A stretch of DNA of 64,000 bases from Guillardia theta CCMP2712. Lineage: Eukaryota > Protista > Cryptophyta. Where the stretch lies: contig NW_005434666.1 in assembly GCF_000315625.1 (NCBI RefSeq), positions 1,011,806 through 1,075,805 of the forward strand, read 5' to 3'. Below, one piece after another: positions 6,361-43,675 of the stretch. A program made the translations under genes and the position numbers. A model generated the notes under the pieces. It did not search any database, had not been told where the DNA came from, and saw only the letters and a list, made by a program, of their open reading frames with translations. Each line of letters begins with the position of its first letter. The stretch's first letter is position 1.

Positions 6361-7090
6361 GGCCTACCCCTACCCTACCCCATCGTCGAACCTCTCAAAA
6401 TTTCCTCTGGAATCCCCTCATCCCACCACTTACTTGTACCCTCAAAAGATCCAATTTCGTACCCCCACCCCCTCCTTCGACCCTGTGAATCCCACAAAAT
6501 GATCTTAGAGAGGATTGTGCTACTACCCCTTCAGTCAAGATACCCCACCTACTCTTTACTCCTGAAACTACCCTACTGAATAGGTGGGCTGACCCTTCGT
6601 TGGGACTCGAAAGGGCAGGGACACCGGTACGATTGATATGGCACCGTCACCAACCCCCCATATGGTACTGCAAGGTACCCACCTACTGGAGTTAAAACAC
6701 GTAGCACCCCCCGATGCGAAATGTTATTGCTATCACGGTACCCGGTGGTATTCCGATGCACCCCACGACTTTCCCGACACAAATGAAGGGGTACTACCTA
6801 TCACCTCTATGTGAAAAAGGCATGAATGAGGGGTAGTAGGGTCATCAGAGTACCCCCTCACTCCTCTCTCTATAGGATTCTTTCAGTACCGCCTCATCGG
6901 ACCTTGACTAGTTTGTTTTGACCGAGGGGAGGTAGGGTACTAAACTTCAGGGGTAGTTTCATCGGGGGACGGGTATACTGTATGTGATGACCCGTCTTTC
7001 AAGATGAAAGCGAGTGGAAATCAGGTGGTAGGGCACCCTTGAACGACAGGAGTCGGATCCTGTACCAGAGGGTAGGTGCGTTTGGAGGTG
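6361..7090. promoter_or_regulatory. Putative bidirectional promoter region rich in TACCC(C)/(G)GGGTA motifs
   Basis: Lies between two divergent ATGs (5650 on -, 7376 on +). Many TACCC copies on the left side give way to GGGTA copies on the right. Confidence 0.5.
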
Positions 7091-19930: not shown

Positions 19931-20530
19931 TGCAATGAGCTAACACAGAAAGTTATGAGCTCACAAACAGGGATGACGAACACAATTGAAGGAGCGATCA
20001 CTCCAGCACAAGGGGGACGAGCAACAACGGCAGTTACAAGAGAGGCTGCAGTCGATGGCGGTGAATGGCGGGTAGTCGAGATCCCTGCTGGTCTTCCAAC
20101 AGGAGGAGAAGGTGGAGGAGAAGGAGCTAGAGGAGAAGCTGTAAGAGCAAGAGCAGACGAAGAGGAGGGAGAAAGGGGAGGCGGAGCAACGGGATCAAGC
20201 ACAGAAACGTTCGGCCCATCACATCCCGTGTTTGAAGTGATCGCTGTCATGAGCCCTCTTCCTCCTGACGTCCTGGACGGGAGGGGGAGGAGAAGTGACA
20301 TGTGCGTCTTCATCGAGAGCCCCAGAACTATCCACGTCTTCCCGCATGACGGCTGCAAGGCGATGATGCAGTACGACAAGTCGGAGCAGGCGGCATACCA
20401 CAAGGTGGATAGGAAAGTGAATATCAGGGGAGGAGGAATCTTTACGAGGTCGATAGTGGGTCGTTTGAAGGATGAAGGGAGGAAAAAGCGTGTCGAGAAG
20501 AGTCTTCATAGGGCCATTCATGGCGACTGA
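19718..20530 (+). CDS. Intronless hypothetical protein, 270 aa, with a Gly-Ala repeat N-terminus and a globular-looking C-terminal region
   Basis: Continuous ORF. The C-terminal part (DMCVFIESPRTIHVFPHDGCKAMMQYDK...) has strongly C/G-ending codons like the other coding exons. The GA tract comes from the GGAGC(A/G) array at 19799-19930. Confidence 0.5.
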
Positions 20531-20598
20531 AGAGGCTCGTGGGCCGAGTTTACAAGCAACACATAAACAATAGAGTTCGACTTTGGACATGCGCTATG

Positions 20599-21817
20599 TT
20601 ACAACTGCTCCCCCAGGTATCTCAGCGTTGCAGCGCAACCTCTGGTGATGATGGAGCTGAGAGGGGCCTGTACAAGTCAAGTGTCAAAGATGTCGGGCAG
20701 CTCGCGATCTCCGTCACCTTGAAGAAGTTGGCGGTGACGACCAGGTTCTTCAGTGATCCCTTGGGGGGAAGGAGTTTCCCTGCGAAGTCTTAATGGAGGA
20801 GGCGCGAGCGCGGAAGGAGAGGGGAAGGAGAGCAAAGGGAAAAAGGAGCAACGAGGAGGAAGGGAGGGAGGGAGGGAGGGAGGAGAAAAGGCCCACCGAG
20901 TTCAGCCGGGAGAACAGCAAGTTGATTGTGCGTTAAATGAAGTTCCTGCTCGATCGTCATTCATCACCTTGTGTTCCCTTATCCACTCCTCCTCCTCATC
21001 ATCATCATCACCATCACCACCTCCACCACCACCACCACCCCTCATCTCTCTCCTCCTCATCATCATCGTTAACTCCTCATCCTCCTCAACATCGTCATCA
21101 TCATCATTCTCGTCTTCGTCCTCATCATCACCTCCAGCTTCGTCAAGGCCCCCACGTCCGGCGGGACCGTATCGAGCATGTTGTAGGAGAGTTTGAGTCG
21201 CCGGAGACTGACGAAGCTGTCAGCAGCAAGACGAAGGAAAGAGAAGATAGGACGAGAGGGAAGGAGGCAGGCAGGAGGAGGGCGAAGAGAAGAGGGAGGA
21301 GAGAAGTGCGAGCGAAGAGAAGAGGGAGGAGAGAAGTGAAGAAGGGGAGGCAGAGGGCAGGGGAGAGGAGCAGGGAGTCGGGCCCACCTGGTGTTCTGTC
21401 CGATGGCACGGGGGAGGACGGAGATCTCGTTGTAGGAGAGCTCGAGTTCCTCAAGCTTTCCAAGCTGCGGGAAGGGGAGTGAGGAAGAGGAGGAAGAGAA
21501 GGAGGACAGAGAGAGGAGTGAGAGCGGGGAGGAGGATAGCAAGAGGGGTGAAGAGGAGGAGGAGGAGGAGGAGGAGGGGCAGGGAGAGGAGGTGGGAAGC
21601 GGAGGAAGAGATTGGGAGGGGAGGCAAGATCACCCGAGCGAGAGCAGGAGGGAGTCCTGCGATCTGATTCTGATTCATGCGGAGATCCCGCAACTGTTGC
21701 GGAGAATGAGAAAATTGACCGGAAAGGACAGCGAGAGAGGGTGGAAAAGGAGTAGGGGAGAAGATAAGTCGAAGTGAAGGAGACTGTGAGGAGGAGCGGG
21801 AGCAGGAGCGGCAGCAT

Positions 21818-21857
<40 letters not shown>

Positions 21858-24800
21858 GGAAGGATGGTGTATCCAGAAATTGAAGTGTTGCAGGGTTTTA
21901 CCTCAGTTATGACACAAAGACAAGCTGGAATTTCTCTGAAATTGTTTCCATCGAGATTGACAAACCGAAGCGACTGAAACGAGGGTGAGAAAGAGCCATC
22001 ACACAACATCATCAACAGCAACAGCAATTCCTCCTTATTGCTGAAGGAAGAGTGTAAGGAGGAGTGTAAAAGGGAGGAGGAGGAGGAGGAGGAGCAGCAG
22101 CAGCAGCAGCAATTATCAACAATCGTCATCGCAATGTTCCACACCTGAATGATCGAGACTGTATCCGGAAGCTCTGAGAGGTGGTTGAAAGGAACATGAA
22201 GCCTTTCAAGATTTTCTGAAGAATTGTTCGTCAGACAGTAATCAGCATCATAAAATCTCCCAGAACAATCTCAACAATCATCAGATGTCTCAACTCTACA
22301 AGTTGTAACCTACTGCTCTCATCTCACCATCTCGCAGATCTTCGAGTGGATTGAGAGCATCCGGTTGTAACCCGCCATGAGCTCCACCAGGGTTGTGAGA
22401 TCGCAGACTTCGACAGGCTGCAAAAGAAACTTCAACAAGCACATCTTGACAACACCAACATTGCTCTGCAAGCAAACAAGACACCAAGACAAGAAGACAA
22501 CTTCTTGACGCAACGACATCGATCGCTCTCAAGTCTCACCATCTCTGTAAGGATGTTGTCGAGCAGGTTGAGCCTCTTCAATGACGCATACTGCTCCAGC
22601 TGTCACGCTCATCGTCGTCTCTCCTCTCCTCCTCCTCCTCCTCACCTGCCCTTCCTTGGTATTCATCACAAGCTCTGGCGGCCAATCCTCCAACCCTAGA
22701 CTGCTGAGATCCAGCCTGCCAGGGGATAAGAGAAGAGCAGAGCAGTGAAGAGAGAATACAAGGGAAGAGCAAAGAATATAAGAGAACAGGAAACAAGACA
22801 ACACAATACAGTGCAATGCAAGAGGGACGAGAAGAGGCTAGCTAAGGCGGATCACCTTCCCCCTCCTCTGGCTTCTCGAAGTCTTCCCAGCCATTCCTTG
22901 ACGATACTAACGCCCTTCGAAAGGATCTGGAACATCTTCAACAACGTAGAAATGCTGAACCCTCCTCCTGCTCCTCCTGCTCCTCCTGCTCCTCCTCCCC
23001 TTCTTTTCATCTTTCTGCTCAGATGGTTCACCTGCTTCGGCGGCGAGAGGAGGATGACGTCATCCAAGTCGAGCATCTGCAGGGACGCGCAGTCTGCGAG
23101 GCCGAAAGGAAGAGACTGCAAGCCTGCAGGGCAACAGAATCAGAAGACAGGTCAGAGTGAAGGAGAGGAGGGGAGCAGGGGGGAGGAGGGGAGGGCAGGA
23201 GAGAGGAAAGAGGAGGGGAGAAAGGAGAGGAAAGAGGAGAGAAGGGGAGAGGAGAGGAGAGGAGGGGAGGAGAGGGATAGGAGAGGAGAGGAGAGGAGAG
23301 GAGAGGAGAGGAGAGGAGAGGAGAGGAGAGGAGAGGAGGGAGGAGAGGAGAGGAGGGGAGGAGAGGGATAGGAGAGGAGAGGAGAGGAGTGGAGTGGAGG
23401 GATAGGAAAGGAGAGGAGAGGAAGACCGGTTTTGTCAAGACGCAGGACTCGGAGAGCTCGGAGGTTGCCGATCCAGTCAGGGAGTTGGTGGATGGGGTTG
23501 GAGCCAAGTCGGAGCTCCTCGAGATGTGCCATTCGCCCGATATGAGGAGGAACAGCACGCAAGTTCATTCCTGCGATAGAGAGAGATGAGGAGGAAGATG
23601 AAAGTAGATGGATGAGAAGAGAGATGATGAAAAGAGAGAAGATATGAAGAAGATTGTCAAAGTGTGAAGAAGATTATCATGAGAGAAGGGGTATTGACCA
23701 ACGAGAAGATGTCATTGGATGTGAACTCATGTTAGAAAACGTCTTTGGTCATGTGAGAAACGAGAAGGCAGATGGTACACGTGATGAACGAGGAAGAAGG
23801 AAGGAAAAGAGTTCAGTAGGAGAAATTACCTGAAAGATCAAGACATTTCGTCTTGAGGGTTGCATGACATATCTCGAGGTATCGCAAGAGAGCAGTTGAT
23901 CCTTCATTCAAGATCTTTGTTCGAAGAACTCAGTCTGGACGCTGTCGAACAAGTTTCATTGTTTCACCTCTGATGGTAGTTGAGAGAGTTCATACTCATC
24001 ATAGAGAAAGACCTGAACAAACAAGCAGGTCAACAGATCGATTCACAAACAATGGTGTTCTCACTTTAAGGGAGGAAGACAACAACCCCAGGCCAGAAGG
24101 CAAGACTGAGATCATGTTGCCGCGAACATCAAGAGATTTCAAGTTTGTAAGCTTCTCCATGTTGTCAGGTGTGCAAACATGGCCTGCAAGGAAAATTTCT
24201 CCACTCAGTACATCGTTCGCAGATTCAGACCAAGATATTTGTGTATGGCATGTTTACACGAGATTTGTTGAGAATGAGTTTCACCTGGGAGTGCGGTGAG
24301 ATTATTGTTCGATACATCTAATACTGCAAGCTGATACAGATCACAAACTTCATCTGCAATGGCCTGATCGTACTGTCAGACACAGACACGGCCTGATGTT
24401 TAAGACCTGCAACCCGTTGTCCGAGAAATGGAGCTCCCTGACGTTTTCAAGCTTTCGGATATCCGAATCCAACACCAGGATGTTGTTCTCTGAAAAGTCG
24501 AGCCATGTGATTGTCGTCAGAGTGCAAACTGACGATGGGACGTTGACGAATTTGTTTGCTCGCAGATTCAGACATGTAAGGTTCGTCTGCGCACATGTTG
24601 AGAAAATACGAACTGTGACAGACAGGAGTTGTACCAGGTAGACGAAGGTGAAGGGAAGGGAGGACAAGAGGTTGGAAGGGAGGAGAAGGGATGTAAGGTT
24701 TGTCAAGAGCCGGATGCTCTCAGGTAAAGATGTCAACTTGTTGCTTCCCAGCCGAAGATCCCTTGTAAAGCTCAAATCCCGGAGATTCGGCAGCTGACAA

Positions 24801-25182
24801 TGTTTCAGAGAAGGTGAGCAAAGCATTATAGGAGAGGAGAGGAGAGGAGAGGAGAGGAGAGGAGAGGAGAGGAGAGGAGAGGGACAAATTGAAAGGAAGC
24901 GGAGGAGGAGGAGGAGGCAAACACGGAGACGGAGGAGAAAAACAACAAGGAGGAGAACAAGGAGCAGGAGGAGCAGGAGGAGCAGCATAGCGTACCTCTT
25001 GCATCAAGTTGTCGCTCAAGTCCATGGTGTGCATTGATGGGCCCGCAAGCTGCTGAATGGCAAGAGGGAGGGCAGACATGTAGCAACTCTTCATGTCGAG
25101 GATCCCAGTCTGCGCCAGAAAATGTCAGATGGCATGATTGATATCATGAGGAGGAGGAAGAGGAGGATTGTATTGTGATGAC

Positions 25183-25248
<66 letters not shown>

Positions 25249-28200
25249 TTGATAGTGGTGAGAAGGTTATCCGACTCACTCTCTTGCCGTGATATTGGGC
25301 CCCGAGGTACTTCAACACAACGTGACAGCCTATGAAGTATATGACCATCTTTGCGTGTCTTGGTTCAACATTCAACCTTTCTCGCGGACCTCGATCGGAG
25401 GATCTTCAAGATTGTTGAGAGACAACTTGAGCTCTTCTAGCGGACACAGGCAGAGCTCCAGAGGAAGCTGAAGAGTAAGAGATGATCAGCAAGGAGTGAA
25501 GCGAGATGTGAGGAGATGGGAGAAGAAGAGGAGCAGAGGAAAATAAAGGGGAGTAGGAGAAGAGGAAGAGGTAGAAGTGGCTGTGGTGTGGGAGGAGGAG
25601 GAAAAGGAGAATACTCTGCGCAACAAGTTGGACTCGACGTCAAGATGCTTCAGTCTATGGAGCAAACTGATCTGAAAGATGAAGGTTTCAAAACAAAGCA
25701 TGAAAGAATGAAGAAACAAAATGAGAAGCATTCTCTTACCTCAGGAGGAAGTTCTGAGATGTCGTTTCGACAGACAGACAAATGATTAATATAACTCATC
25801 CGTAGCACGTACGCCGGGATCTGAAGGTAACAATCAATAAGCTCAAACGGGTTCAAAACTTGAAACAGCAGCAAAACACGCATACGCAAGGAATAGAGTG
25901 ATGGTGGGCAACAAAACATCCCGAATCAGTCAGCAAGTGATTTTAACAAGAAGAAACCTGCAAGAGATGAAACCCTTCCAAGATTAGCTTGTTTGTCTTG
26001 CCGTCCCATATCCCTGGTACATCCTCCATTCCAGGAGGAGGAGAGGCGAGAAAGAGCTGCTTGAGGTACCGCAGCATGACTCCTGCTCCAGCACTCTCGA
26101 TCTCCTGGGGGATCGAACCGAACGGGTTGTCATGGAACTCAAAGTTGTTGAGCTTCTCGCACATGCCCAACCCGGTCGGCAGCATGTTGAGTTTGTTGTT
26201 TGAAATGTCAAGGACTGTCAGGTGCGTCAGGTTCCAGAACGTCTCCGGAAGCTTCTCCAAGAGATTCGAGCCGAGGTTGAGGAAAGTGATACTGTACATG
26301 TTCCCAAACAGGTCAGGAAGAGTGACCAAGTTGTTGTTCTCGAGATTGAGACGCTGGAGGAGGTGGAGTTGGCCTATGTTCGGGGAGACTTGTTCCAACT
26401 TGTTGTGGCTGATCCTCAGGTCTAGGAGGGTTGTGATCCTGCAGATTGAAGGAGAGATCTCTGTGAAGTTGTTCTCAACGAGGTTGATGTACTCAAGGTT
26501 GCGCAGGTCGCTGAGGGTTGACGGGATGTCGGAAAGCTGGTTGAACGGCAGATGCAACTTACGTAGGTCTACCAGCTTGTCGATGTTGGGGTGAATCCCT
26601 TTGAGACGGTTATGGGCGATGAGGAGGTTTTGTAACGCCGGGTGGTTGCCGATGCTCTTGTCGAGGCTCTCGATCAGGTTGTCACCCACGTCGATAGTTG
26701 TGAGCTCGGGGTATAGCTGGGCCTCGATCGGGAACTTGGTCAGCATCATGCTCGTCAGCTGGAGCTTGCACGTCTGCATGCCTTGGTATAACCTTCGAAG
26801 ATAGTCCATGATCGACCCGAAGCCTTTGTCGCAGATCTCGGGAGGAGGAGAGCGGATGGGGTTGCCGTCGAGCTGGAGGGAGGTCATGCTGGATATGTTG
26901 GAGACCTCAGGAGGAATGGCGACTAGCTTGTTGCCAGTGAGATCAAAAGTTTGCAATGATGACAACTCCCCTACGGTCTCGGCAATGAACTCCAGCTGGT
27001 TTTGAGCTGCAGAGAAGACTTGCAGGCTGGCAAGAGAGCTGATCCACGGCTTGATCTCACGAAGCTCGTTCTGATCCACGTGCAGGACCTTGAGGGAGCC
27101 AAGGTTGCTGATCGTGCCAGGAAGGTCTCTCAAGAAGTTCGATGACAAGTGCAGCTCAACAAGAGACGTGAAGGTGATTCCTATCATGGGATCGAGATCT
27201 TTCAGCCTGTTCTGCGTTGCAGAGAGGACCTGAAGGCTGTCGAGGGTGAGAGCCTGAGGGTCGAAGAGGTCTGGATCACTGAAGAACATGTCGAACCCGT
27301 CGAGGAGCAGCTCGCCCGATCGCTGCGACTTGTCGAGGTTGAGGAGATACTTCAACATCCTCTTCGTGCCGAGATTGACGACGGAGATCGGAGGGCTGCG
27401 GAGAGGACACATGCTGACGTCACACTGCTCGAGCGACTCCAGCAGGCCCAGAGCTGAAGGGAGGAACTCGAGGCTGCGATTCTCGTCGAGGGAGAGGAGC
27501 TTCAGGCTTGTCAGGCGTGATATGGCGCTGTCGATCTCCCGCAGCTCGTTATGAGCCACCCGAAGAGTTTCCAAGGAGTAGAGGAAGAAGATGCACTCGG
27601 GGATGTCAGCGAGCTGATTGTGGTCGAGGTTGACAAGGGTCAAGTTTGACAAGGACGTCAACGAGATGTCAAGAGTCTGCAGACAGTTGTGGTGTAGCAG
27701 GAGCGACTTCAGGGATGACTGTCTCAGGATGTAGTCCGGGAGTTTTGGGTCTTGGAGGCCTGACTCAGATATGTCGCAGATATCGTGCTGCTGCAGGTCA
27801 AAAATCCTCCTGAGGTAGTTGAGGAAATTCTTGACGCCTTTCTTCACGACCTCCACCGGAGGGACCGTGAGGGGGTTGCCCTTCACGCGCACGTCATGGA
27901 GGGAGAGGACGGCACCGAGCTCAGGAGGCAGCTCTCGGATGTTGTTGTCCTCGATGTTGAGGAGAGAGAGCTTCTCGAAGGCAGAGACGGAGCTCGGGAG
28001 GGAGAGGAGACTGTTCTTCCTCAGCGACAGGGAGACGAGATTGCGGAGGAGGCCCAAGTCAGGCGGAAGCTCCTTCAGCTCGTTCTCGTCCATGTGAAGA
28101 TCTTTCAGGCTGGTCATGCACAAAAGGGACCTTGGGATCTCAGTGATCTTGTTGGCAGACAGGTCGAGGCTCGTGATGTCGGGCTTCTCCAGCACAACCT

Positions 28201-31200
28201 TTGGGATGCTGAGCAGGTGCATCTTCTTGAGATCGATCACGTGGGTCCGATCTGCGTTGAGAATGTTGGACAGGAACCGGACGACGAGCTGGGCTCCTGC
28301 TGAGCAGACCTCCATCGGGGGGGTCACCATCTCGTTCCCGCTGACGTCAAAGTGCGTCAAGTTCTTGAGGTGGCCGAAGGTGAGGGGGAGGAAGGTAAGT
28401 CGGTTGTTGGTCGCAGAGAACTGTTCAAGGTTGACCAGCCGGCTGAGCTCGTCAGGCAGCTGCTCGAGGGAGTTGTTGTCGAGGTTCAACGACTTGATCA
28501 TGGTGAGTTGACAGTGCTTGACAGGAAACTTGACGAGAGAAAGATCGCTGAGGTCCAGAGACAACTTGACCTTAGCCTGGTGGACTGCAGAGAGGTACTG
28601 AAAGATCTTGTTGCGCCCTTGGGAGTTGATCTCATAGGGAGGGTCTTCGAGAGGGTTCATGGTGATGTCCAACTCCTGCAGATGGGTGAAGCGGAGGAGG
28701 ATCGGGTGGAGCTCTTTCAGCAGGTTGTCGCAAAGGTTCAGACGAACTAGGGGAATGTGCGGGTGCAGCCACTCTTCTATCCTCTTCACCCTGTTGTGAG
28801 AAAGAGAGAGGATCGTCAGGTTGGTCAAGTTCGACACGCTGCGAGGGATTGAGGCCAGCTCGTTGTAGTCCAGATGCATCTCTGTGAGCAGGGTGAGCTG
28901 TCCGATCCCAACGAACAACTTCTGAAGATGGTTGTTGCTCAAAGACAGGGATGTCAGCCCTGTCATGAAGGCGACTTCAACTGGCATCCTCTTCAGCTCG
29001 AGGTTGCGGAGATCCAAACTTTGCGTCTTCCTCCCATCCTGCATCCTCTTTAGGTACTCGAGGATGGAGCTCGTCCCTCTGTCCAGGACCTCCACGGGAG
29101 GAGATCGGAGCTCGTTGCCCGCAAACAGCAGCTCCCGGATGGTGTACAACGAGCCCAGCTCCAGGGGAAGGAACAGAAGATTGTTGCGTTCAAGGTTCAA
29201 GATCTCCACTCCCACAAGCTGCTCAATCTCCGGAGGAAGAGACTCGAGATGATTGTCGCTGAGATCGAGCACCGTCAGCGATTCCATGTTGACAATCTCC
29301 AGCGGAAAGTTGTTGAGCTCCATGTTGGAGAGGTCCAGCTTCCTTGTTTGCAGAGACTCCTCGAAGCGACTGAGGTACCTCAGGATGGAGCTGGTGCCCG
29401 GACGAAGAACTTCAGGAGGCGGAGAGACGAGAGGGTTGTTGTCGACGACCAGCTTGCTCAAAGTCGGGATCTTGGAAAGGGAATAGGGAAGGCTGGGAAA
29501 GAGGTTGTTTGACAGAGAGAGGGTTGAGAGACTTGTGCATTTGTCGATCCCCGCGTATAAGACTTCAAGCTTGTTGCCGTGCAGGTAAAGCTCTCGGATG
29601 TTGACGAGCTTCGCCATGTAGGGGGGAAGAGCTGAGAGAAGATTGTCTGAGAGGTTGAGGACCTGCCCGAGATTCAACAGCTGAAAAAGAGGAAGAGGAA
29701 GAGGAAATGGAGAAGAGCGAAGAAGAGAGAAGAAAGAAGACAAACAAGAGGATGAAGAAGAGGGAAGAAGAAAAGAGAAAAAGAGGAAGAGAAAAGCGGA
29801 AAAGAGGGAAGAAGAAAAGAGGAAGAGGAAGAGAAAAGAGGAATAGAGGAATAGAGGAAGAGGATAGTTCAGGAGCGAGGGTTGTGCGCTGCTCACTTTC
29901 ATCTGCCGCATGTTTCCGATCGTAGAAGGAAGTTCAGCAATCATGTTCCCGCTGAGATCAAGAAACTCCAGCCGCTGCCAAGCCCCCATCACCGCGCTCA
30001 TCCTGCTCAGCTTGTTCTTGCTCAGGTCCAGCTTGGTCATGGCGGTCAGCGCGCCCATGCTTGAGGGGAGAGTTTCCAGCTGGTTGCCCGCCAGGCAGAC
30101 GCTAATCAGCCTCCCCTGCTGGGGAACAGGGCGGGTAGGGGTGGAGACCAGCTCGGGGGGGAAGGAGAAGAGTTTGAACGCAGGAAGAGTGAGGTGGAAG
30201 GTCGAGAGCGCCAGGTTGACCTGCTGCAAGTAGCGGATGATCGTGCTGCAGCCCTGCTGGAGGATCTCGACCGAAGGCTCTTCCATATTCTTTTCGTCAA
30301 AGTTGAGGACCGTGAGGAGGGAAAGAGCGCCTATGCTAGGATGCAAGCTCGTGATGGGGTTGCTCCTCAGCTGAAGGGTCTGCAGACTGGTGCAGCTGGA
30401 AATCTGCTGGGGAAAAACAGAGACGAAGTTCCTTTCGAAGGACAGAGATTGGAGGTTGGTCAACGAGCCCAGCTGATCTGGAAGCACCTCGATCTCGTTC
30501 TCGTCGAGGTTGAGGTGGTGGAGGGTGTCAGCGAGCTGAAAAATGTCGGCCGGTACCTCAACGATCTTGTTGTGGGATATCGACACACCTGTATGACAGG
30601 TGAGGGGCTGCTGGGGTCATCCAGAGCTAGTCAAGCTGGTCAAACTCACCTGTCAGGGCCTCGGAGCGCAGGCACTGGAAGTGAGAGTGGAACCTGAAGA
30701 CGTCTGCTGGGAACTTCTCAAGTTTGAGGCCCTCGAGCTTCAGGTACCTGCTGGAGGAAGCATAGCCGAACTGCCGTAGATAGTTGAGGATGATACTCTT
30801 TCCCTGCTCGACAATCTCCTGGGGAGGAGTAGACCAAGTCTGCTCGTTGCCGGACAAGTCGATGTCCTGCAGGGATGTGCATATCCCCAAGGTGAGAGGG
30901 ATTTCCGACAAGTGGTTGTCGTTGAGGTACAGCTTGCAGAGGGCTGGAAGCACGCCGCTCTCAGGCGGTATGATTCTGAGCCGGTTCCTCTGCAGGGAGA
31001 GAAAGGTCAGGGAGCTGAGAACCATCATCTCTGCTGGAAGCGACTCGATCTCGTTGTCGTCGAGGACGAGGGAGTGTAGCTTCGGGATTGTCAGCGTCTC
31101 AGCCGGGAAGTAGCGGATGTGACAGCTGGACATCTCGAGGCCGTGAGAGAGGGCGGAGTGATACATCTTGTGGAAGTACATGATCACTCCGTCGTTGCCC

Positions 31201-33695
31201 TGCGAAAGAACATCATCCTGCGGACTCTTCAGCGGGTTGCCCTCGTAGTTGAGGTTGCGTAGCTTGGTGAGGTTCCCAAGGGAGAGGGGGAGGATGGAGA
31301 CTTGGTTGGAGTTGAAGGAGAGGTCCTCCAGGTTTGTCAGGAGCTCCAGCTCGAGAGGAAGTTGTGAGATGAGATTGTGGCTGCAACGAAGTCGGACGAG
31401 CGTTTGACATCTCCCGATCTCCTGTGGAATTTTCTGCAGCCTGTTGAAGCTGAGCCGCATCTCTTCGATGCTGTGGAGGTTCCCGATGGAGGAAGGGATC
31501 CAGCCGATCTTGTTCTTCGTTACTGACAGCTCCTTGAGGTTCTTGAGCTTCCCGATCGCCTCCGGGAGAACATGCAGACTGTTGCTGTCAAAGTTGACCT
31601 TAGTGAGAGATGTCAAGGTACAGAGCTGATCGGGGAGCGACGTTAGCCGGTTCTGAACAGCCGATATCGTTCGAAGCTTCGAGAGCTTCCCGATGAAAGT
31701 GGGAATCTCGTCGATGAGAGTGTTGTCTAGCCTGAGCACTCGGAGCTGGTTCAGAGTCTGAATGATGTCCGACAACGCCATGAGCGGGTTGTGGGAGAGA
31801 TGAAGCTCGTGGAGGTCTCGTAGCACGGTGATCTGTTCAGGCAGGACCTGGATGGAGTTGTACTGCAGCTGCAGCACCTTCAGCTTCTTCAGCTGGCAGA
31901 TTTCCATCGGGAAAGTTTGAAACTTGTACCCTGGCAGCTCGAGCTTGTCCACTGTCCCCTCCACGTTTGAGAACTTGGAGCAGTACACGCACGCAGCCTT
32001 TGCTCCTTTCCTCAACACCTCCACAGGAGGCTGATAGAAATTCTCCACGTCGATCTCCAGCTTCTCCAACGATGTCCAGTAGGCGATAGTCATTGGAAGA
32101 CGAGAGATCTTGTCGTTGCTCTTGATATTCAGCCGTTTCAACTTGATCCAGGCGCTGATCCACAAGTCAGCAAAGAAGGGCCCTTCTAGACGGTTGTCAC
32201 TCAGGTTGACATCGGTCAACGACGTGCAGTTCTCCAGGGCTCTAGGGAGGCGCACGATGTCGTTGGACTGAAGTTGGAGGTTTTGCAAGCTGTCCAGCCT
32301 GCTGAATTCTTCAGGTAGATTTCGGATCCTGTTGGCGGAGAGGTCCAACAGCGTCAGCCCTTCAATGTCCATGATTGCCAGGTCGACGGAAGGGACGTCA
32401 ATCTCGCTGAAGTGAACCGATTTGGACGTTCTTGCCTCAAGAAGCACAGCAAGGTACGCAGTGATACTCTTGGAGCCAAGTTGCACAATCTGAGGAGGCG
32501 GGGATTCCACGTCGGTACCCTCGAGGATGATTTCAGTCAGATTCCTCAACGATCCTGTCTCAGGGCTGAACCTCTTCAGGCTCACGCAGTTGCTGACATC
32601 CAACTGAGTCAGGGAGCGCATGTACCGGATGGACGCGCTCAAAGCCGCCATCCTGTTGCCCGCAAGGTTCAAGACAGTCACTGACGTCATGTTGGTGATC
32701 TCAAGGGGGAGAGTGGAGGCTGTGATCCCCATGCTGCTCAGGTCGATCATGTTGGTCTCCTCGATCCAACTCATCCTCCTCCGATACTCTCTCAGGTACA
32801 GGAAGACGCTCTGCACCCCCTGCCGAACAACCTCCATGGGAGGGACGGAGAGAGTGTCCTGTAGTCCGTCAGCGTCGATATCCTTCAGGTTTTCACATTC
32901 CTGCAGCTCAGCAGGGAATGATCGCAGAGGGTTGCGAGCAACCACCAGGATCTTCAGTTGCGTCAACTTTCCCATGGACTTTGGCAGGGCTATCAGCTGA
33001 TTATCTTGAACCCACAATGTTTGTAGGGACTCACACAGTCCAAGTTCTTCTGGAAGCCAGGTCAACCTATTACCGAAGATTCGCAGCTGCGCCAAGTTCT
33101 TGAGATCGCCAACAGAAGTCGGAAGCACTTCGATCTTGTTGTTGTGTGCAAACAGAGTTTTCAGGTAATCCAACTCGAATATCTTGTCAGGGATCATTCC
33201 AAGGCTCAAATCCCCAATGTCAAGCTTCTTTGTGCCCGATGCTGCTTGAACACGCTTCAAGATCTCCTTGGCTGAAGTTTTTGAGTTCTTCGGAACCACC
33301 TGGTGTGCCCTCCAGTAATATTCTTCTGGGTCTTCTATCTCTCCAGTATCCTGAACCACCGCAATGGGGTTGGAGGTAGGCTGGGCGGACTCGGGCCGCG
33401 TCTCCGACCCTTGAGACTGATCTTCCTCGAAGTCCTTCTCATCAAACTCAACGGGGCTCTCCTGCACCATCTCCTGCACCATCTCCTGCACCATCTCCTG
33501 CTCACTCGATGGGCTCTTTGCTTCCCGAGGCTCATCGTCATGCTCCACCGGACTGGTCGCGTTTGACCCTGCCCCATTCTTGGGATGAATCTGCGGGAGT
33601 TGTGAAGATTTGCTGGCGGAAGAGGAGGGCCTGCTGTTGGACTTCAAAGATTTTTCTGAAGGCGCTGATGAAATGGGAGGAAGGGTCGCCGACAT
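20599..33695 (-). CDS. Giant leucine-rich-repeat protein (~3,300 aa) built from about 18 LRR modules, each closed by a PPxE-x3-4-G-x6-YL cap helix
   Basis: ORFs 30627-33695 and 25943-30586 join via intron 30589-30649. An in-frame intron lies at 29663-29896. About 25 further small LRR exons lead to ..ANFFK-APLSSIITRGCAATLRYLGEQL* (TAA at 20599-20601). Dense LxxLxLxxNxLxxLP repeats throughout. No GTPase or kinase motifs seen. Confidence 0.9.
23240..23390. repeat. (GGAGA)n pentamer array, intronic (another copy at 24831-24882)
   Basis: Directly visible tandem repeat inside introns of the LRR gene. Confidence 0.95.
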
Positions 33696-39965: not shown

Positions 39966-40693
39966 GGCACGGAGCTTGGTATCCCCTGCATATCTCTCAG
40001 ATGAGCCAGTCTCCACCCCAGTACATCTAATAGATGTAAATGCCAATCTATCAAGCATCGATCCTGACTTTACCGCCTTTTCCAATCCCAACTACATCGA
40101 TGCTTCATCTTTCCTTCTTTCCCTCTCCCCATTCTCTTCTGTTATCTCCCCTTTTGTCATCGCCCTTTTTCTCCTCCTGCCTCCTATCCTCTCCTCACTC
40201 CTCCTCTCCTCTCCTCTCCTCTCCTCTACCCTTCTCTACCCTCCTCTCTTGTCTACATCGGCATCGATCTCTTCCTCTCACTCTCTTCGCAGCACTTCGG
40301 CACTTCGGCATTGCTTACCTGCCATGGCAACGCGACTGTTCAGCTTTGGGTCCCACCGACCCTACCAGGAATAAAATGAAGTACCCCTAGTAAATCCATC
40401 AAGTACCCCCATCTCATCATGTGGTACCCCCACCCCCTAATGATTCAGAACAATTTTGGTCCTCGTCCCCTCTCTTACCCGATCGGTCCACCGGCGGCGC
40501 AACGGCCATGGCAAGGGAGGCGAAGGAGGGGAGGAGGAGGAGAGAGAAGTCGGAGCGAGGACGTCAAGACAAGTGATGACGAGGTGGAAGAATCGTCACG
40601 TCCAACAGGAAGAGCCTGGCAAGGGATAGCGAGGAGCCTCTGATTGAAATCAGTCGTTGGCTGTGATAGTGCTTGCCGGGCGGTTCCAGCACC

Positions 40694-43675
40694 ATGAACG
40701 ATGAAGGAATTGAGTATGGGACCCTTGAGGTCTCCCACTACAAGATGTCCAAGAAAATAGCTCAGCTCACTCGAGTGATAAGCATGCTCGTCAACAAGAA
40801 CGAGGAGCAGGAGTATGAGAAGCAGTACCTCAGCGAAGCGTTCGAGATCGAGATTGGCAGAGTAGTCGACGAAGCCAACACTCTCCTCAACGAGGCTCGC
40901 GCAGCCGCTGGTCCAGACGGCTCCAAGATGGAGGCAACAGACATGATACGTGCTCTCAGCAAGCAGCACGAGACAGAGAAGAAGAATGCCTACCATGAGT
41001 TCACAGATTACAAGATGAGGGTGAAGGAGCGAGAGAAGATGTTGGTGGAGCAGTTTGAGAGAAAAGTCGACAGCATGACGAGAGAGCTGACTGACTTGAG
41101 GGAGCAGTTTGAGCACAACACTCGTGCGTTTGCAGAGACGATGCAACTGATGCAGGCGGAGAAAGGGGAGGATGTTGAGAGGCTAAAAATGGATCATGAC
41201 AATCAGATCGCGGATCTGATCAACAAGAGCACCAAGAGGCTCAACGAGACGCTGGCAGAGAAAGCTCGCAGCGAAGAAGAGCTGCGCTCTCAGCTCAAGG
41301 CTGAGTTCGAGCAAGCTCTCGAGCAAACTCAGAAATCGGCCGAGGACAGGGTGAGGTACATCAGGCAGGAGGAAGAGATCAAGAACCGAGCGAACATGGA
41401 GAGCATTCGACGAGAGCTAGGAGCTGAGATCGACCGATACAGGCTGGCAGAGGCCTCTCTGCGACATACGGTCTCCGAGCTGCAACAGAGATGCGCCGAC
41501 TACGAGCTGACCCTCGCAAGACGGGAGAAGGAGCTGCACGACCTGGAGCAGAGGAAGGCGGAGGAGGCTGACATGGAGTATCAGAAGTCGCGGCAGATGA
41601 TAGATCGCCTCGAGCGCGAGATCGCTCGTATGGATGACTCGCACAAGAAGGAGCTGGAAGACACCAGGTAGCCGACCAGGTCCCAAAGTTGAACCGATCC
41701 CTAACTGTGCCTGCAGTTTGCGCCTGCTGGAGCAAGCGAATGAACGAGTGAGGGACGTGGAAACAAAGTACATTTCCCAGCTCAATGAGGCTACTCGTAC
41801 AGCAGAGGATCGCCTGGAGAAACAAGAGAAGCTGATCAAGACTCAAATGAACGATCTCTTCCTCAAGTTGCAGAACGACTTCGCTGAACAGTCGAAGAAT
41901 GCGGCACAGCTGATGCAGGACAAGGAGGACGAATGGAGGGTATGTTACATGCTGATCTCCAACCAGACATAACACTGTTGCTCCAGGCGCGAGAGACGGA
42001 TCTCAAGGATCAGATTGAAGCCCTCGACCGCAGGAACCGAGCAGAGAAGCAAGAGTTGGAGAAAGAGTTCAACGCCAAACTGAAAGAGACGCTTGTGAAC
42101 CTTCGTGCAACAGAAGCTGAAGGCCAGAGGATTGCAGTGGAACGAGATCAACTCAGAATGCAAAACGAGAGCCTGAGCGCAACTCTGCATGAAACGAAAC
42201 GAAGCTTTCTGCGTGAACAGGAGTCTAAGGCAAAAGAGTTTGATGAGAAAGATCGGTCGAGACAAACTCATATCGAAGAGCTGGAGAAGAATTTGAAGGT
42301 TAAGAACATCGGAATATTGTTGGATAGCTGACCTGTTTTGACTTGAAGGTTCTTTACGCCTCGGATGAAAAAGCAAGAGAGCTTGAGCACTACAACAAAG
42401 TGATGCAAAACAGACTCAACGACCTCGAGGCAACGCATGAAGAGGAAAAAGCCAAGGTCTGACTGTACAGATGACTCGTCTTATCGTCTTCTGATGCAAG
42501 TGCTGCAGCTGATTGAGAGACACTCCAAGGAGATGCTGAAACTGAAAGGCGAACTAGAACGACAGAAGCAACTGGCAGAGCAGCAAGAGAATGCTCTGAA
42601 TGAAAAGCACAGGTTTCAATCAGTGACGTGGTGCGAGACGGTCTTGTTCACTTTCATCTTGTAGAGTGGAGGCAGAAGCTTATGAAGTAGAACAAAAGGA
42701 ATTGAACAACGCGCTCATTCAGAAATATGAGACACTGTTGCTGCGAAAAGAACAAGAGGCTGAGCTGAAACGTCAGGTGATGTTTTGAATTACTCTGCTA
42801 TGGTTTGAATATTAGCATTCAACCTGACACGCATGTTAGAATGACATTCGAAGTATCATCGAAGAAAATCAGCGTCAGCAGGAAGTTACAAGAAAACAGT
42901 GGATGGAAGAGAGAGAGGAGGCGCTGCGACAAGCCAAGGCTGATTACAACCTGAAGGTTGCCTGTGCGACGAATCGCGAAACCAGAATTCTGATCGTTTT
43001 TCTCCCAGTCTGGCGAGATGCAGAAGGAGTTGATATCATTGCAAGGACAAGTGAAGTTGAAAGAGCAGGAGAGCGAGCAGAGGAGACAAGAAGCAGTCAA
43101 GATCTCACAGAACGTGGAGAGGCTGAAGATAGAATTCCTGAAGCAGATGCAAGCTGATCAAGAGAAGATGAAGAGCGAGGTAGAATCGCTCAAGCGCAAG
43201 CATGTAGAAGAAGAGCAATCCATCAAGGATCGGTCTGAGAAGGTTCTTCGCGCTGCCCAACAAGAGGTGCTTGCCCAATGAGCATGATGGTCTTCACTGA
43301 CCCTGCTGCAGTTTGAAACCGCCAACAACGCTATGATAGAGCGAATCAAAGACCTCGAATACAAACTTGTTACCCGGGAATCTCGTCCGGAAGACAGAGA
43401 GAAGATTGTCCAGGTACCCTTGGCTGCTGCTTGTGTGACGATACATTCATGATCTATGTGGAACAGCTTGAGAAGGAGGTGGCTGAGAAGGAATATCTGT
43501 GCAAGAGGATAATGGAGGAGATGAAATACTTCAAGGTGGCTGTCTTTCTTCATGCTGTTCTCAGTTCTCACCTCGATCTCTCTTTTAGATGGAACTGCAG
43601 AACAGAGAGACATCGGAAACAACAGATGCTGTAAAACCAACGAAGCAACAACAGAGAGGAGCAAACAAGAGATAG
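40694..43675 (+). CDS. FAM184-family coiled-coil protein
   Basis: N-terminal KMSKKIAQLTRVISMLVNKNEEQE..EAFEIEI and C-terminal RESRPEDREKIVQLEKEVAEKE..IMEEMKYFKMELQNRE resemble the conserved ends of FAM184A/B. The middle is a long coiled coil. TAG at 43673-43675. Confidence 0.85.

What the first reader, a model, noticed from the sequence alone, without database searches (positions are those of the whole stretch)
20599..33695. Giant LRR concatemer: ~18 Roco-like LRR modules chained by hinge helices, with no Roc or kinase domain
Seen: the motif (L)xxPPxE(V/I)xxxGxxx(I/V)xxYL recurs 14 times in the two long ORFs (e.g. PPMEVVRQGVQSVFLYL, PPPEVLRPGTSSILRYL, PPVEVLDRGTSSILEYL, PPPEICDKGFGSIMDYL). 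At least 4 more copies occur in spliced 3' exons (~25290-25420, ~23860-23990, ~22870-23060, and the very C-terminus at 20602-20650). Most copies run straight into a new 'xxTxxLDLSxxxLxxFP' start, so the helix appears to cap one solenoid and begin the next. Modules hold from a few to about ten LRRs. Known: this motif normally occurs once, as the LRR-to-Roc linker of Roco proteins or as a C-cap of intracellular LRR proteins. Inference: a segmented, articulated multi-solenoid scaffold or multi-ligand sensor (possibly innate defence) assembled from whole Roco-type LRR units. I do not recognise this architecture.
Basis: partly seen in the sequence, partly recalled or inferred. Interest (0 to 1): 0.8.

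Follow-up and report, generated by a model that had tools for sequence, protein, structure and literature searches.

The report
Giant eighteen-module LRR-only protein gene
One expressed 28-exon gene encodes a 3,188-residue cytosolic protein made only of 18 leucine-rich-repeat blocks joined by a Roco-type cap helix; it belongs to an unnamed, unstudied family of such giants in marine protists, and its function is untested.

Summary
It is found nowhere else in the 64 kb. Spliced transcript contigs from two studies join both ORFs and the small exons into one minus-strand mRNA. The gene has 28 exons (33695 to 20599), all 27 introns are GT-AG, and the product is 3,188 aa. Past a 165-aa disordered N-terminus, no stretch longer than 36 aa lies outside LRRs or caps. 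So there is no Roc, COR, kinase or other domain.

An AlphaFold model of one junction (pLDDT 98, pTM 0.92) shows the cap helix between two LRR arcs that do not form one continuous solenoid. The confidence suggests a fixed elbow, not a loose hinge.

The architecture is not unique. A collinear ortholog (40-44% identity) has the same module lengths. About 20 further clusters of giant LRR-only proteins carry 5-14 such junctions, in marine protist transcriptomes and metagenomes. None is named or studied. Module order is old and conserved, and concave faces are not hypervariable.

I read it as a multivalent cytosolic scaffold rather than an immune sensor. It is a new variant of a known kind.

The parts
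20599..33695 (-). Whole coding region of the giant LRR gene: 28 exons, 27 GT-AG introns of 43-303 nt (median 122), 3,188-aa product
   Evidence: Joints in spliced transcript contigs X1/X2. Splice sites were read from the sequence. The frame is open through all exons.
30650..33695 (-). Exon 1: start codon at 33695, about 165 aa of disordered acidic/Ser-rich N-terminus, then modules 1-5 and the start of module 6
   Evidence: The N-terminus aligns from residue 3 with the start of the complete ORF of ortholog P0263.
30589..30649 (-). Intron 1 (61 nt, GT..AG). It holds the stop codon that separates the two long ORFs
   Evidence: Splicing keeps the frame and the LRR register (...LRSEALTG|VSISHNKIVEVP). 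Transcript runs hold 0.86 of the sampled words against 0.91-0.93 in DNA runs, as expected if the introns are missing.
29897..30588 (-). Exon 2
29663..29896 (-). Intron 2 (234 nt, in frame, CT-rich). In the raw ORF it reads as a false low-complexity peptide
   Evidence: gtgagc...gggcag. Removing it restores a regular repeat (IGNMRQMK|VLNLSDNLLSALP).
25958..29662 (-). Exon 3 (3,705 nt): modules 7-14
20599..25820 (-). Exons 4-28 (43-181 nt each): 25820-25740, 25671-25615, 25467-25376, 25328-25280, 25109-24996, 24793-24635, 24586-24406, 24362-24284, 24182-24063, 24010-23968, 23914-23829, 23569-23427, 23123-23032, 22926-22856, 22715-22646, 22599-22540, 22417-22328, 22215-22145, 21973-21902, 21693-21634, 21464-21388, 21207-21132, 20945-20897, 20779-20718, 20667-20599. 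They encode modules 15-18
   Evidence: Fifteen joints are listed. The other joints come from GT/AG sites that keep the frame and the LRR register. Some boundaries are ambiguous by 1-2 nt, with the same product either way.
22212..22215 (-). Homopolymer of 4 A (minus strand) where the DNA run X8 and transcript contigs X1/X2 have 5. The window alone is frameshifted here, so I read the site as X
   Evidence: tables 4 and 5c.
32793..32843 (-). Cap 1 PPMEVVRQGVQSVFLYL
32451..32501 (-). Cap 2 PPPQIVQLGSKSITAYL
31980..32030 (-). Cap 3 PPVEVLRKGAKAACVYC
31173..31223 (-). Cap 4 PQDDVLSQGNDGVIMYF
30777..30827 (-). Cap 5 PPQEIVEQGKSIILNYL
30227..30277 (-). Cap 6 PSVEILQQGCSTIIRYL
29372..29422 (-). Cap 7 PPPEVLRPGTSSILRYL
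29051..29101 (-). Cap 8 PPVEVLDRGTSSILEYL, the centre of the junction that was modelled (model = 28787-29317)
28592..28642 (-). Cap 9 PPYEINSQGRNKIFQYL
28271..28321 (-). Cap 10 PPMEVCSAGAQLVVRFL
27812..27862 (-). Cap 11 PPVEVVKKGVKNFLNYL
27344..27394 (-). Cap 12 PPISVVNLGTKRMLKYL
26798..26848 (-). Cap 13 PPPEICDKGFGSIMDYL
26060..26110 (-). Cap 14 IPQEIESAGAGVMLRYL
25304..25401 (-). Cap 15 PPIEVREKG|CHVVLKYL, split by intron 25329-25375
23876..23979 (-). Cap 16 LPSEILNEGSTALLRYL, split by intron 23915-23967
22890..23046 (-). Cap 17 SPPKQ|ILSKGVSIVKEWL, split by intron 22927-23031
20602..20667 (-). Cap 18 and C-terminus APLSSIITRGCAATLRYLGEQL; stop codon at 20599-20601
   Evidence: 3'-biased RNA reads of X13 cover 20497-21284.

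Best explanation
A single, expressed minus-strand gene (33695 to 20599, 28 exons) encodes a 3,188-residue soluble cytosolic protein.

Anatomy. After a 165-residue disordered head it consists only of about 90-115 repeats of the 23-residue SHOC2/Ras-group LRR type. These are grouped into 18 modules of about 4 to 11 repeats. Each module ends with the helix NPLxSPPxEVxxxGxxxIxxYL, the element that ends the LRR domain and forms the LRR-Roc linker in Roco proteins. Here the helix is followed, after about 9 residues, by the first strand of the next module.

Shape. In the model the helix sits between two arcs and breaks the solenoid, giving a chain of 18 separately curved arcs, each with its own concave face, joined by defined elbows.

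Function. Module number, order and length are conserved in an ortholog at 40-44% identity, and concave-face residues are kept better than convex-face ones. I therefore infer that each module binds its own conserved partner, and that the protein is a multivalent assembly scaffold.

Shown: gene structure, expression, domain content, motif copies, orthology, relatives.
Predicted: junction geometry.
Inferred: cytosolic location and scaffold function.
For: One transcript. Contigs X2 (9,262 nt) and X1 (8,296 nt) are spliced at CT..AC (= GT..AG on the minus strand) joints. They run from about 33487 to at least 21207, while DNA contigs of X8 keep the introns. The frame is open through 28 exons.

LRR only.; the ortholog is also LRR only.

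Motif copies. 18 caps.

Cap identity. The best PDB matches of the junction profile are CtRoco residues 417-449, a 349-aa 'Leucine-rich-repeat protein' chain (4wnr, which I take from memory to be M. barkeri Roco2) and LRRD1, one copy each.

Junction model. pLDDT 98.0, pTM 0.92; strands lie 38 residues apart across the helix instead of 23. Whole-model superpositions on SHOC2, RSU1, LRRC8 and Leptospira LRRs give rmsd 9-11 A. Either half alone fits at 1.7-3.3 A. Residues 73-177 fit the N-terminal end of the CNOT6L LRR domain.

Orthology. P0263 is collinear. Its cap positions are ours plus about 13 through module 9. Identity is 40% by BLAST and 44% in a global alignment. The N-terminus is conserved from residue 3.

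Age of the array. All paralogous modules are about equally distant from each other, so there was no recent duplication.

Surface conservation. Identity at concave positions is 121/360, against 106/420 at convex variable positions, Fisher p = 0.011.

Location. No signal-peptide-like N-terminus and no hydrophobic 19-mer above 1.48.
Against: - No partner, location or phenotype is known for this protein or any relative, so the scaffold role is inference from architecture and conservation.
- The junction model rests on an alignment of 70 paralogous and orthologous junctions, which may impose an average geometry. I could not see coordinates or PAE. Only one of 17 junctions was modelled, and a single-sequence model of three modules failed (pLDDT 39.6).
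- The concave-versus-convex difference is modest and rests on one ortholog pair.
- The upstream two introns and the last four joints were not seen directly in the listed joints. They are inferred from sequence, word share and contig arithmetic.
Confidence: 0.6

Rival explanations
1. It is a structural or cytoskeletal element, for example a flagellar or other organelle-associated ruler or strut. In this reading the chain of rigid arcs matters mainly for its length and shape, not for 18 separate ligands.
For: The best sequence match in the PDB is LRRD1, solved in situ in sperm axonemes (9ijj, 9fqr). The elbows are predicted with high confidence. Module lengths are strictly conserved between orthologs.
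Against: The LRRD1 match reflects the shared LRR class and cap, not orthology. LRRD1 has one cap and a death domain. Concave-face residues are conserved above convex ones, which points to ligand binding. There are no localisation data.
Confidence: 0.15
2. It is a multi-ligand innate immune sensor built from many recognition modules.
For: LRRs are the usual recognition module of immune receptors. Other unchecked notes of this scan report many variable LRR genes in the same genome.
Against: There is no NB-ARC, NACHT, TIR, death, kinase or Roc domain, and no room for one. The module array is old and collinear with an ortholog at 40-44% identity. There are no recent module duplications. Concave faces are not hypervariable.
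Confidence: 0.1
3. It is one long continuous LRR solenoid in which the 'caps' are only short non-LRR islands inserted every few repeats, with no segmentation.
For: Non-LRR island regions that interrupt LRR arrays are common (PMC4030839, listed). The strand after the helix follows it at once.
Against: No continuous LRR structure superposes on both halves of the confident junction model (rmsd 9-11 A against 1.7-3.3 A for halves). In Roco proteins, LRRD1 and the LRRC40 models the same helix ends an LRR domain.
Confidence: 0.08
4. It is several adjacent genes, or an assembly artefact, wrongly read as one.
For: A stop codon lies between the two long ORFs, and there is a frameshift at 22212-22215 in the window.
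Against: The stop lies in a 61-nt GT-AG intron. The frameshift is a one-base homopolymer difference that is absent from the DNA and RNA runs. Single spliced contigs from two studies span the parts. The ortholog is one complete ORF.
Confidence: 0.02

Closest known systems
Roco proteins (Chlorobium tepidum CtRoco, LRRK2): the LRR domain and its LRR-Roc linker
   Same: The cap motif is the best PDB match of the junction profile: CtRoco 417-449 DNPLESPPPEIVKQGKEAVRQYFQSIEEA, E about 2e-7. The LRR class is the same. In CtRoco this linker is the hinge of a large GTP-driven movement (PMC11052575).
   Different: Roco proteins have one cap followed by Roc-COR. Here there are 18 caps, each followed by another LRR module, and no Roc or COR.
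SHOC2 / Ras-group LRR proteins (plant PIRLs, RSU1, LRRC40)
   Same: They share the 23-residue repeat LxxLxLxxNxLxxLPxxIGxL and are intracellular. SHOC2 is among the top sequence and fold matches. PIRLs carry a 'GVYW motif' after the LRRs (PMC8904235). LRRC40 models match the LRRs plus cap helix at rmsd 1.7-1.9 A.
   Different: These are 250-600-residue proteins with one LRR domain (LRRC40 has two caps, from memory, not checked here). This protein chains 18 domains.
LRRD1 (leucine-rich repeat and death domain-containing 1), solved in sperm axonemes (9ijj, 9fqr)
   Same: It is the best full-sequence PDB match (E 1.5e-61). It has the same cap once, at residues 730-762.
   Different: It has a single LRR block followed by a death domain and is 853-863 aa long.
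Slit (four tandem capped LRR domains D1-D4)
   Same: It is also a chain of separately capped LRR arcs on one polypeptide. Slit domains appear among the half-model matches (2wfh, 1w8a).
   Different: Slit is extracellular and has Cys-rich LRRNT/LRRCT caps and separate linkers (general knowledge). Here a single Cys-free helix serves both modules, and there is no signal peptide.
Unnamed giant multi-cap LRR-only proteins of marine protists (the MMETSP transcript P0263/P0121, Hanusia phi P0124, metagenomic P0002, P0001, P0122/P0271, P0328 and others)
   Same: They share the architecture: LRR only, 1,000-4,300 aa, 5-14 profile-detected junctions. P0263 is a collinear ortholog. Their genomic neighbours are eukaryotic.
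   Different: Apart from the ortholog they are only 23-27% identical, with other module patterns. None carries a name, a function or a paper. The window protein has the most caps seen: 17 by profile plus the terminal one.

Membership tests
Roco proteins | Roc (Ras of complex) GTPase domain | tested here: not met
   There is no Roc or Ras hit in ORF1 or ORF2 or in the ortholog. No stretch longer than 36 aa is unassigned after residue 177. No such ORF lies in the neighbourhood. True Roco controls (Branchiostoma P0127, P0146) do hit Roc and COR-A.
Roco proteins | COR domain after Roc | tested here: not met
   The same searches apply.
Roco proteins | N-terminal LRR domain ending in the NPLxxPPxEIxxxGxxxIxxYF linker helix | tested here: met
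   The junction profile matches CtRoco 417-449 and 4wnr 6-32. The motif is present 18 times.
Ras-group / SHOC2-type intracellular LRR proteins (SHOC2, RSU1, PIRL, LRRC40) | 23-residue repeats LxxLxLxxNxLxxLPxxIGxLxx | tested here: met
   Column consensus over 60 regular repeats: L1, L4, L6, N9, L11, L14, P15, I18, G19, L21. SHOC2 and LRRC40 are among the top matches.
Ras-group / SHOC2-type intracellular LRR proteins (SHOC2, RSU1, PIRL, LRRC40) | No signal peptide or membrane segment | tested here: met
   The N-terminus is hydrophilic and the highest 19-residue hydropathy is 1.48. This is a simple scale, not a dedicated predictor.
Ras-group / SHOC2-type intracellular LRR proteins (SHOC2, RSU1, PIRL, LRRC40) | One LRR domain per protein (one or two caps) | tested here: not met
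   There are 18 caps and modules.
NLR / STAND-type LRR immune receptors | NB-ARC or NACHT nucleotide-binding domain, or a TIR, CARD or death signalling domain | tested here: not met
   Only LRR families are found, and there is no free stretch.
Slit-like tandem LRR domain proteins | Secreted, with Cys-rich LRRNT and LRRCT caps around each LRR domain | tested here: not met
   There is no signal peptide-like start. The caps are a Cys-free helix. No LRRNT or LRRCT Pfam hits were found.
Unnamed multi-cap LRR-only giants (this work) | At least 5 cap-plus-N-cap junctions in a protein with no domain other than LRR | tested here: met
   The window protein has 17 profile hits plus the terminal cap. Relatives have 5-14.

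The most novel reading that the evidence does not exclude
This is the largest known member of an undescribed eukaryotic protein family, 'poly-LRR' giants. In this family the helix that ends the LRR domain of Roco, SHOC2 and LRRD1-type proteins has been re-used as a rigid connector. It turns LRR arcs into a defined chain of up to 18 independent binding faces, a new way of building a very large multivalent scaffold. The family is conserved across marine protist lineages and shares its capped LRR unit with Roco proteins.
Probability: 0.45. Interest if true: 0.65.

Novelty: new variant of a known kind. Interest (0 to 1): 0.55.

Why it matters
LRR domains are almost always studied as one arc with one binding face. 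This is a conserved, expressed protein that strings 18 capped arcs together with a shared helix, and it has relatives in many marine protists.

- It gives a natural example of how solenoid domains can be concatenated at fixed angles. That is of interest for scaffold biology and for repeat-protein design.
- It shows that the LRR-Roc linker helix of LRRK2-type proteins is a general LRR end-piece that can also start a new LRR domain.
- Gene annotation has missed the gene. No full-length product of this locus was found in the protein collections.

Tried and rejected
- AlphaFold on 477 residues (three modules) without an alignment gave pLDDT 39.6 and was discarded.
- An exhaustive enumeration of exon chains timed out. 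I read the remaining splice sites by eye instead.
- The Branchiostoma proteins with '29' and '12' matched stretches looked like multi-cap Roco proteins. A stricter count shows one true cap each; the other stretches are plain LRRs.
- Naming the organism or the relatives failed. Two cluster look-ups and two word searches gave only 'LRR protein', MMETSP or EukProt transcript labels, or nothing. One earlier scan note calls the genome an alga. I did not test this, and a guess at the species is left out.
- Paper searches for tandem or multiple LRR domains, LRR capping, PIRL and non-LRR islands found no description of this architecture. That is no proof that none exists.
- A weak CoV_nucleocap hit in a neighbouring ORF lies below the Pfam cut-off and in low-complexity sequence, so I ignored it.
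Full report
**Observation**

The region holds two long minus-strand ORFs, 30627-33695 (1,022 aa) and 25943-30586 (1,547 aa). A strict pattern for the cap motif gives 12 hits in the whole 64-kb window. All 12 lie in these two ORFs, and no other frame or place has any. A looser pattern and a profile of the junction bring the count to 14 in the two ORFs. Pfam finds only LRR families above their cut-offs.

**Gene model**

- The stop between the two ORFs lies in a 61-nt GT-AG intron (30589-30649). Removing it keeps the frame and the repeat register.
- A 234-nt in-frame CT-rich intron (29663-29896) sits inside the second ORF.
- I laid four runs on 20300-26200. X1 and X2 come from different studies and are spliced transcript contigs. 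Fifteen listed joints all have CT..AC ends on the plus strand, which is GT..AG on the minus strand. The DNA contigs of X8 run through the same introns.
- One X2 contig of 9,262 nt, and one X1 contig of 8,296 nt, place position 26200 at their base 6,993. With both upstream introns removed, that puts the contig start at about 33487. This lies inside the (QEMV)x3 tandem repeat of the N-terminus, a natural breaking point for an assembler (inference).
- The transcript runs hold 0.86 of the sampled words of 25400-31300, against 0.91-0.93 for the DNA runs. This fits the loss of the five introns in that stretch.
- I read the remaining splice sites from the sequence. Each is GT..AG and keeps both the frame and the LRR register.
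- The result is 28 exons, introns of 43-303 nt (median 122), and a product of 3,188 aa with no internal stop.
- There is one blemish. At 22212-22215 the window has four A where both the DNA run and the transcript contigs have five. I read that codon as X.
- The protein ends ...APLSSIITRGCAATLRYLGEQL*, with the stop at 20599-20601. The raw RNA reads of X13 are 60 nt, forward-stranded and 3'-biased. They pile up at 20497-21284, so the mRNA ends just below the stop.
- The start at 33695 is supported by the ortholog, whose complete ORF aligns from our residue 3.

**Anatomy**

Each of the three is split by an intron. The total is 18 caps.
- Cap-to-cap lengths are 107-269 aa, which is about 4 to 11 repeats. 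The lengths 107 and 153 recur.
- A strict LRR pattern finds about 90 repeats. Module lengths imply about 115 (my arithmetic).
- The junction consensus is NPLxSPPxEVxxxGxxxIxxYL, then 8-9 residues, then T..LxLxxxxLxxFP.
- After residue 177, no stretch longer than 36 aa lies outside repeats or caps. Nothing in the flanks encodes Roc, COR or a kinase. So the protein is LRR-only.
- It has no signal-peptide-like start and no membrane-like segment. I infer that it is cytosolic.

**What the cap is**

The junction profile, searched against all PDB sequences, hits these chains best:
- the Chlorobium Roco protein at its LRR-Roc linker (residues 417-449);
- a 349-aa 'Leucine-rich-repeat protein' chain (4wnr), which I take from memory to be a Methanosarcina Roco2 fragment;
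- LRRD1 at the end of its LRR block.

Each has one copy. Two amphioxus Roco proteins that seemed to have many copies have one true cap each. In CtRoco this linker is the hinge of a GTP-driven movement (PMC11052575). Plant PIRLs are drawn with a 'GVYW motif' after their LRRs (PMC8904235). I believe this is the same element, but I did not check it on a sequence.

**Structure**

- A single-sequence AlphaFold run on three modules failed (pLDDT 39.6).
- I then aligned 70 junction-centred pieces: three repeats, the cap, and three repeats, taken from this protein, its ortholog and eight relatives. They align in register.
- With this alignment the model of junction 8 has pLDDT 98.0 and pTM 0.92. Strands follow each other every 23 residues, except across the junction. 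There a short helix (75-78) and a 17-residue helix (82-98) lie between strands 62-64 and 100-102.
- Continuous LRR solenoids (SHOC2, RSU1, LRRC8, Leptospira LRRs) align to the whole model only at rmsd 9-11 A, with TM 0.4-0.5. An exhaustive pass over 48,161 representative chains found nothing better.
- Either half fits known LRRs at 1.7-3.3 A. Residues 73-177 (helix plus downstream repeats) fit the N-terminal end of the CNOT6L LRR domain and the starts of other LRR domains. Residues 1-87 or 1-89 fit internal LRRs.
- ESM-Atlas models of LRRC40 match the upstream repeats plus helix at 1.7-1.9 A.
- So, in the model, the helix ends one arc and starts the next, and the two arcs are not one solenoid. 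The high pTM suggests a fixed elbow.
- Caveats: the alignment mixes paralogs, only one junction was modelled, and I had no coordinates or PAE.

**Relatives**

- The word search with ORF2 found only 23-30% identical proteins (24-26% among the best ten). The best were unnamed LRR-only giants.
- The junction profile, run against 1.84 billion representatives, gave 1,012 proteins at E <= 1e-3, 151 at <= 1e-10 and 25 at <= 1e-30.
- The top hit is an MMETSP transcript (P0121, 3,254 aa). Its longer isoform P0263 (3,721 aa) is collinear with our protein over its whole length. Identity is 40% by BLAST and 44% in a global alignment. Its caps sit at our positions plus about 13 through module 9, so module lengths are conserved. 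It is also LRR-only.
- Fragments at 45-56% identity show that further orthologs exist. A 299-aa fragment at 96.5% is the only trace of this locus itself.
- Counting only profile matches that cover the cap, about 20 representative clusters have 5-14 junctions. They include P0002, P0001, P0122/P0271, Hanusia phi P0124 and P0328 of 4,291 aa.
- Two of these relatives lie on eukaryotic metagenome contigs, beside ubiquitin E1, glutaminase, CAF1A and kinase genes.
- None has a name beyond 'LRR protein'.
- A search in the 2,047-6,512-aa range found no annotated full-length product of this window's gene.

**Evolutionary signals**

- Paralogous modules inside the protein are all about equally distant. 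The array is therefore old and not the result of recent tandem duplication.
- Across 60 regular repeats, identity to the ortholog is 0.80-0.98 at three of the core positions (L1, L4, N9) and 0.53-0.72 at the other framework positions.
- At the concave-face variable positions (2, 3, 5, 7, 8, 10) it is 0.25-0.45. At the convex variable positions (12, 13, 16, 17, 20, 22, 23) it is 0.18-0.40.
- The totals are 121/360 against 106/420, Fisher p = 0.011.
- The concave faces differ between modules (entropy above 3 bits) but are kept between species.

**Interpretation**

The anatomy is secure. For function, I commit to a multivalent cytosolic scaffold: 18 arcs with 18 distinct, conserved concave faces, held at defined angles by shared cap helices.

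- This rests on analogy with SHOC2-type LRR scaffolds (general knowledge) and on the conservation pattern. It is inference.
- A mainly structural role, for example a flagellar one as for LRRD1, is a reasonable variant.
- An immune-sensor role has no support: there is no signalling domain, the array is stable, and the binding faces are not hypervariable.
- A continuous solenoid with islands is disfavoured by the model.
- Separate genes are excluded by the transcript contigs.

**Novelty**

The repeat class and the cap are known. The concatemer architecture is not unique to this genome, yet it is unnamed. Four paper searches found no description of it. I rate it a new variant of a known kind, of moderate interest. 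The family, the shared-helix elbow and the conserved module pattern are worth a structural and cell-biological follow-up.

Noticed in passing
window 22212-22215: The window has a run of four A (minus strand) where DNA run X8 and transcript contigs X1/X2 have five. This one-base difference frameshifts exon 21 in this assembly only, and is probably an assembly error or a strain indel.
   Followed up: partly
window 29663-29896: An in-frame, CT-rich 234-nt intron inside the 1,547-aa ORF translates into a false low-complexity peptide. ORF-based reading overstates the protein here.
   Followed up: yes
window 24831-25027: There is a depth spike in all runs (word depth up to 1,421) and many loose ends, over a GA/CT-rich repeat inside intron 24794-24995. 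It is a dispersed simple repeat.
   Followed up: no
window 40673-41671 (+): An ORF matches Pfam FAM184 (E 3.3e-17). It is a neighbouring gene on the other strand, unrelated to the LRR gene.
   Followed up: no
P0127 (XP_078697542.1, Branchiostoma hybrid), 2,810 aa: This is a Roco protein (LRR + Roc + COR-A) fused at its C-terminus to a 'GT4-conflict' glycosyltransferase domain (E 8e-74). The fusion is unusual and may be defence-related.
   Followed up: no
P0136 (unnamed, 1,361 aa): It has seven nearly identical caps (NDLPVPPVEVIQRGTRDVFLYVKDVLQG), most 174-196 aa apart (the last 229). This is a case of recent tandem duplication of a capped LRR module, unlike the old array in the window.
   Followed up: no
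L002 5739-16320: The 2,814-aa multi-cap protein P0271 is preceded by an overlapping 726-aa LRR ORF on the same strand. The real product may therefore be about 3,500 aa, split by an intron or a frameshift.
   Followed up: no
window 20599-33695, public protein collections: No full-length annotated product of this gene was found. Only a 299-aa fragment (P0216, 96.5% identity to residues 1017-1247) turned up. The gene is probably missing or fragmented in existing annotation.
   Followed up: partly
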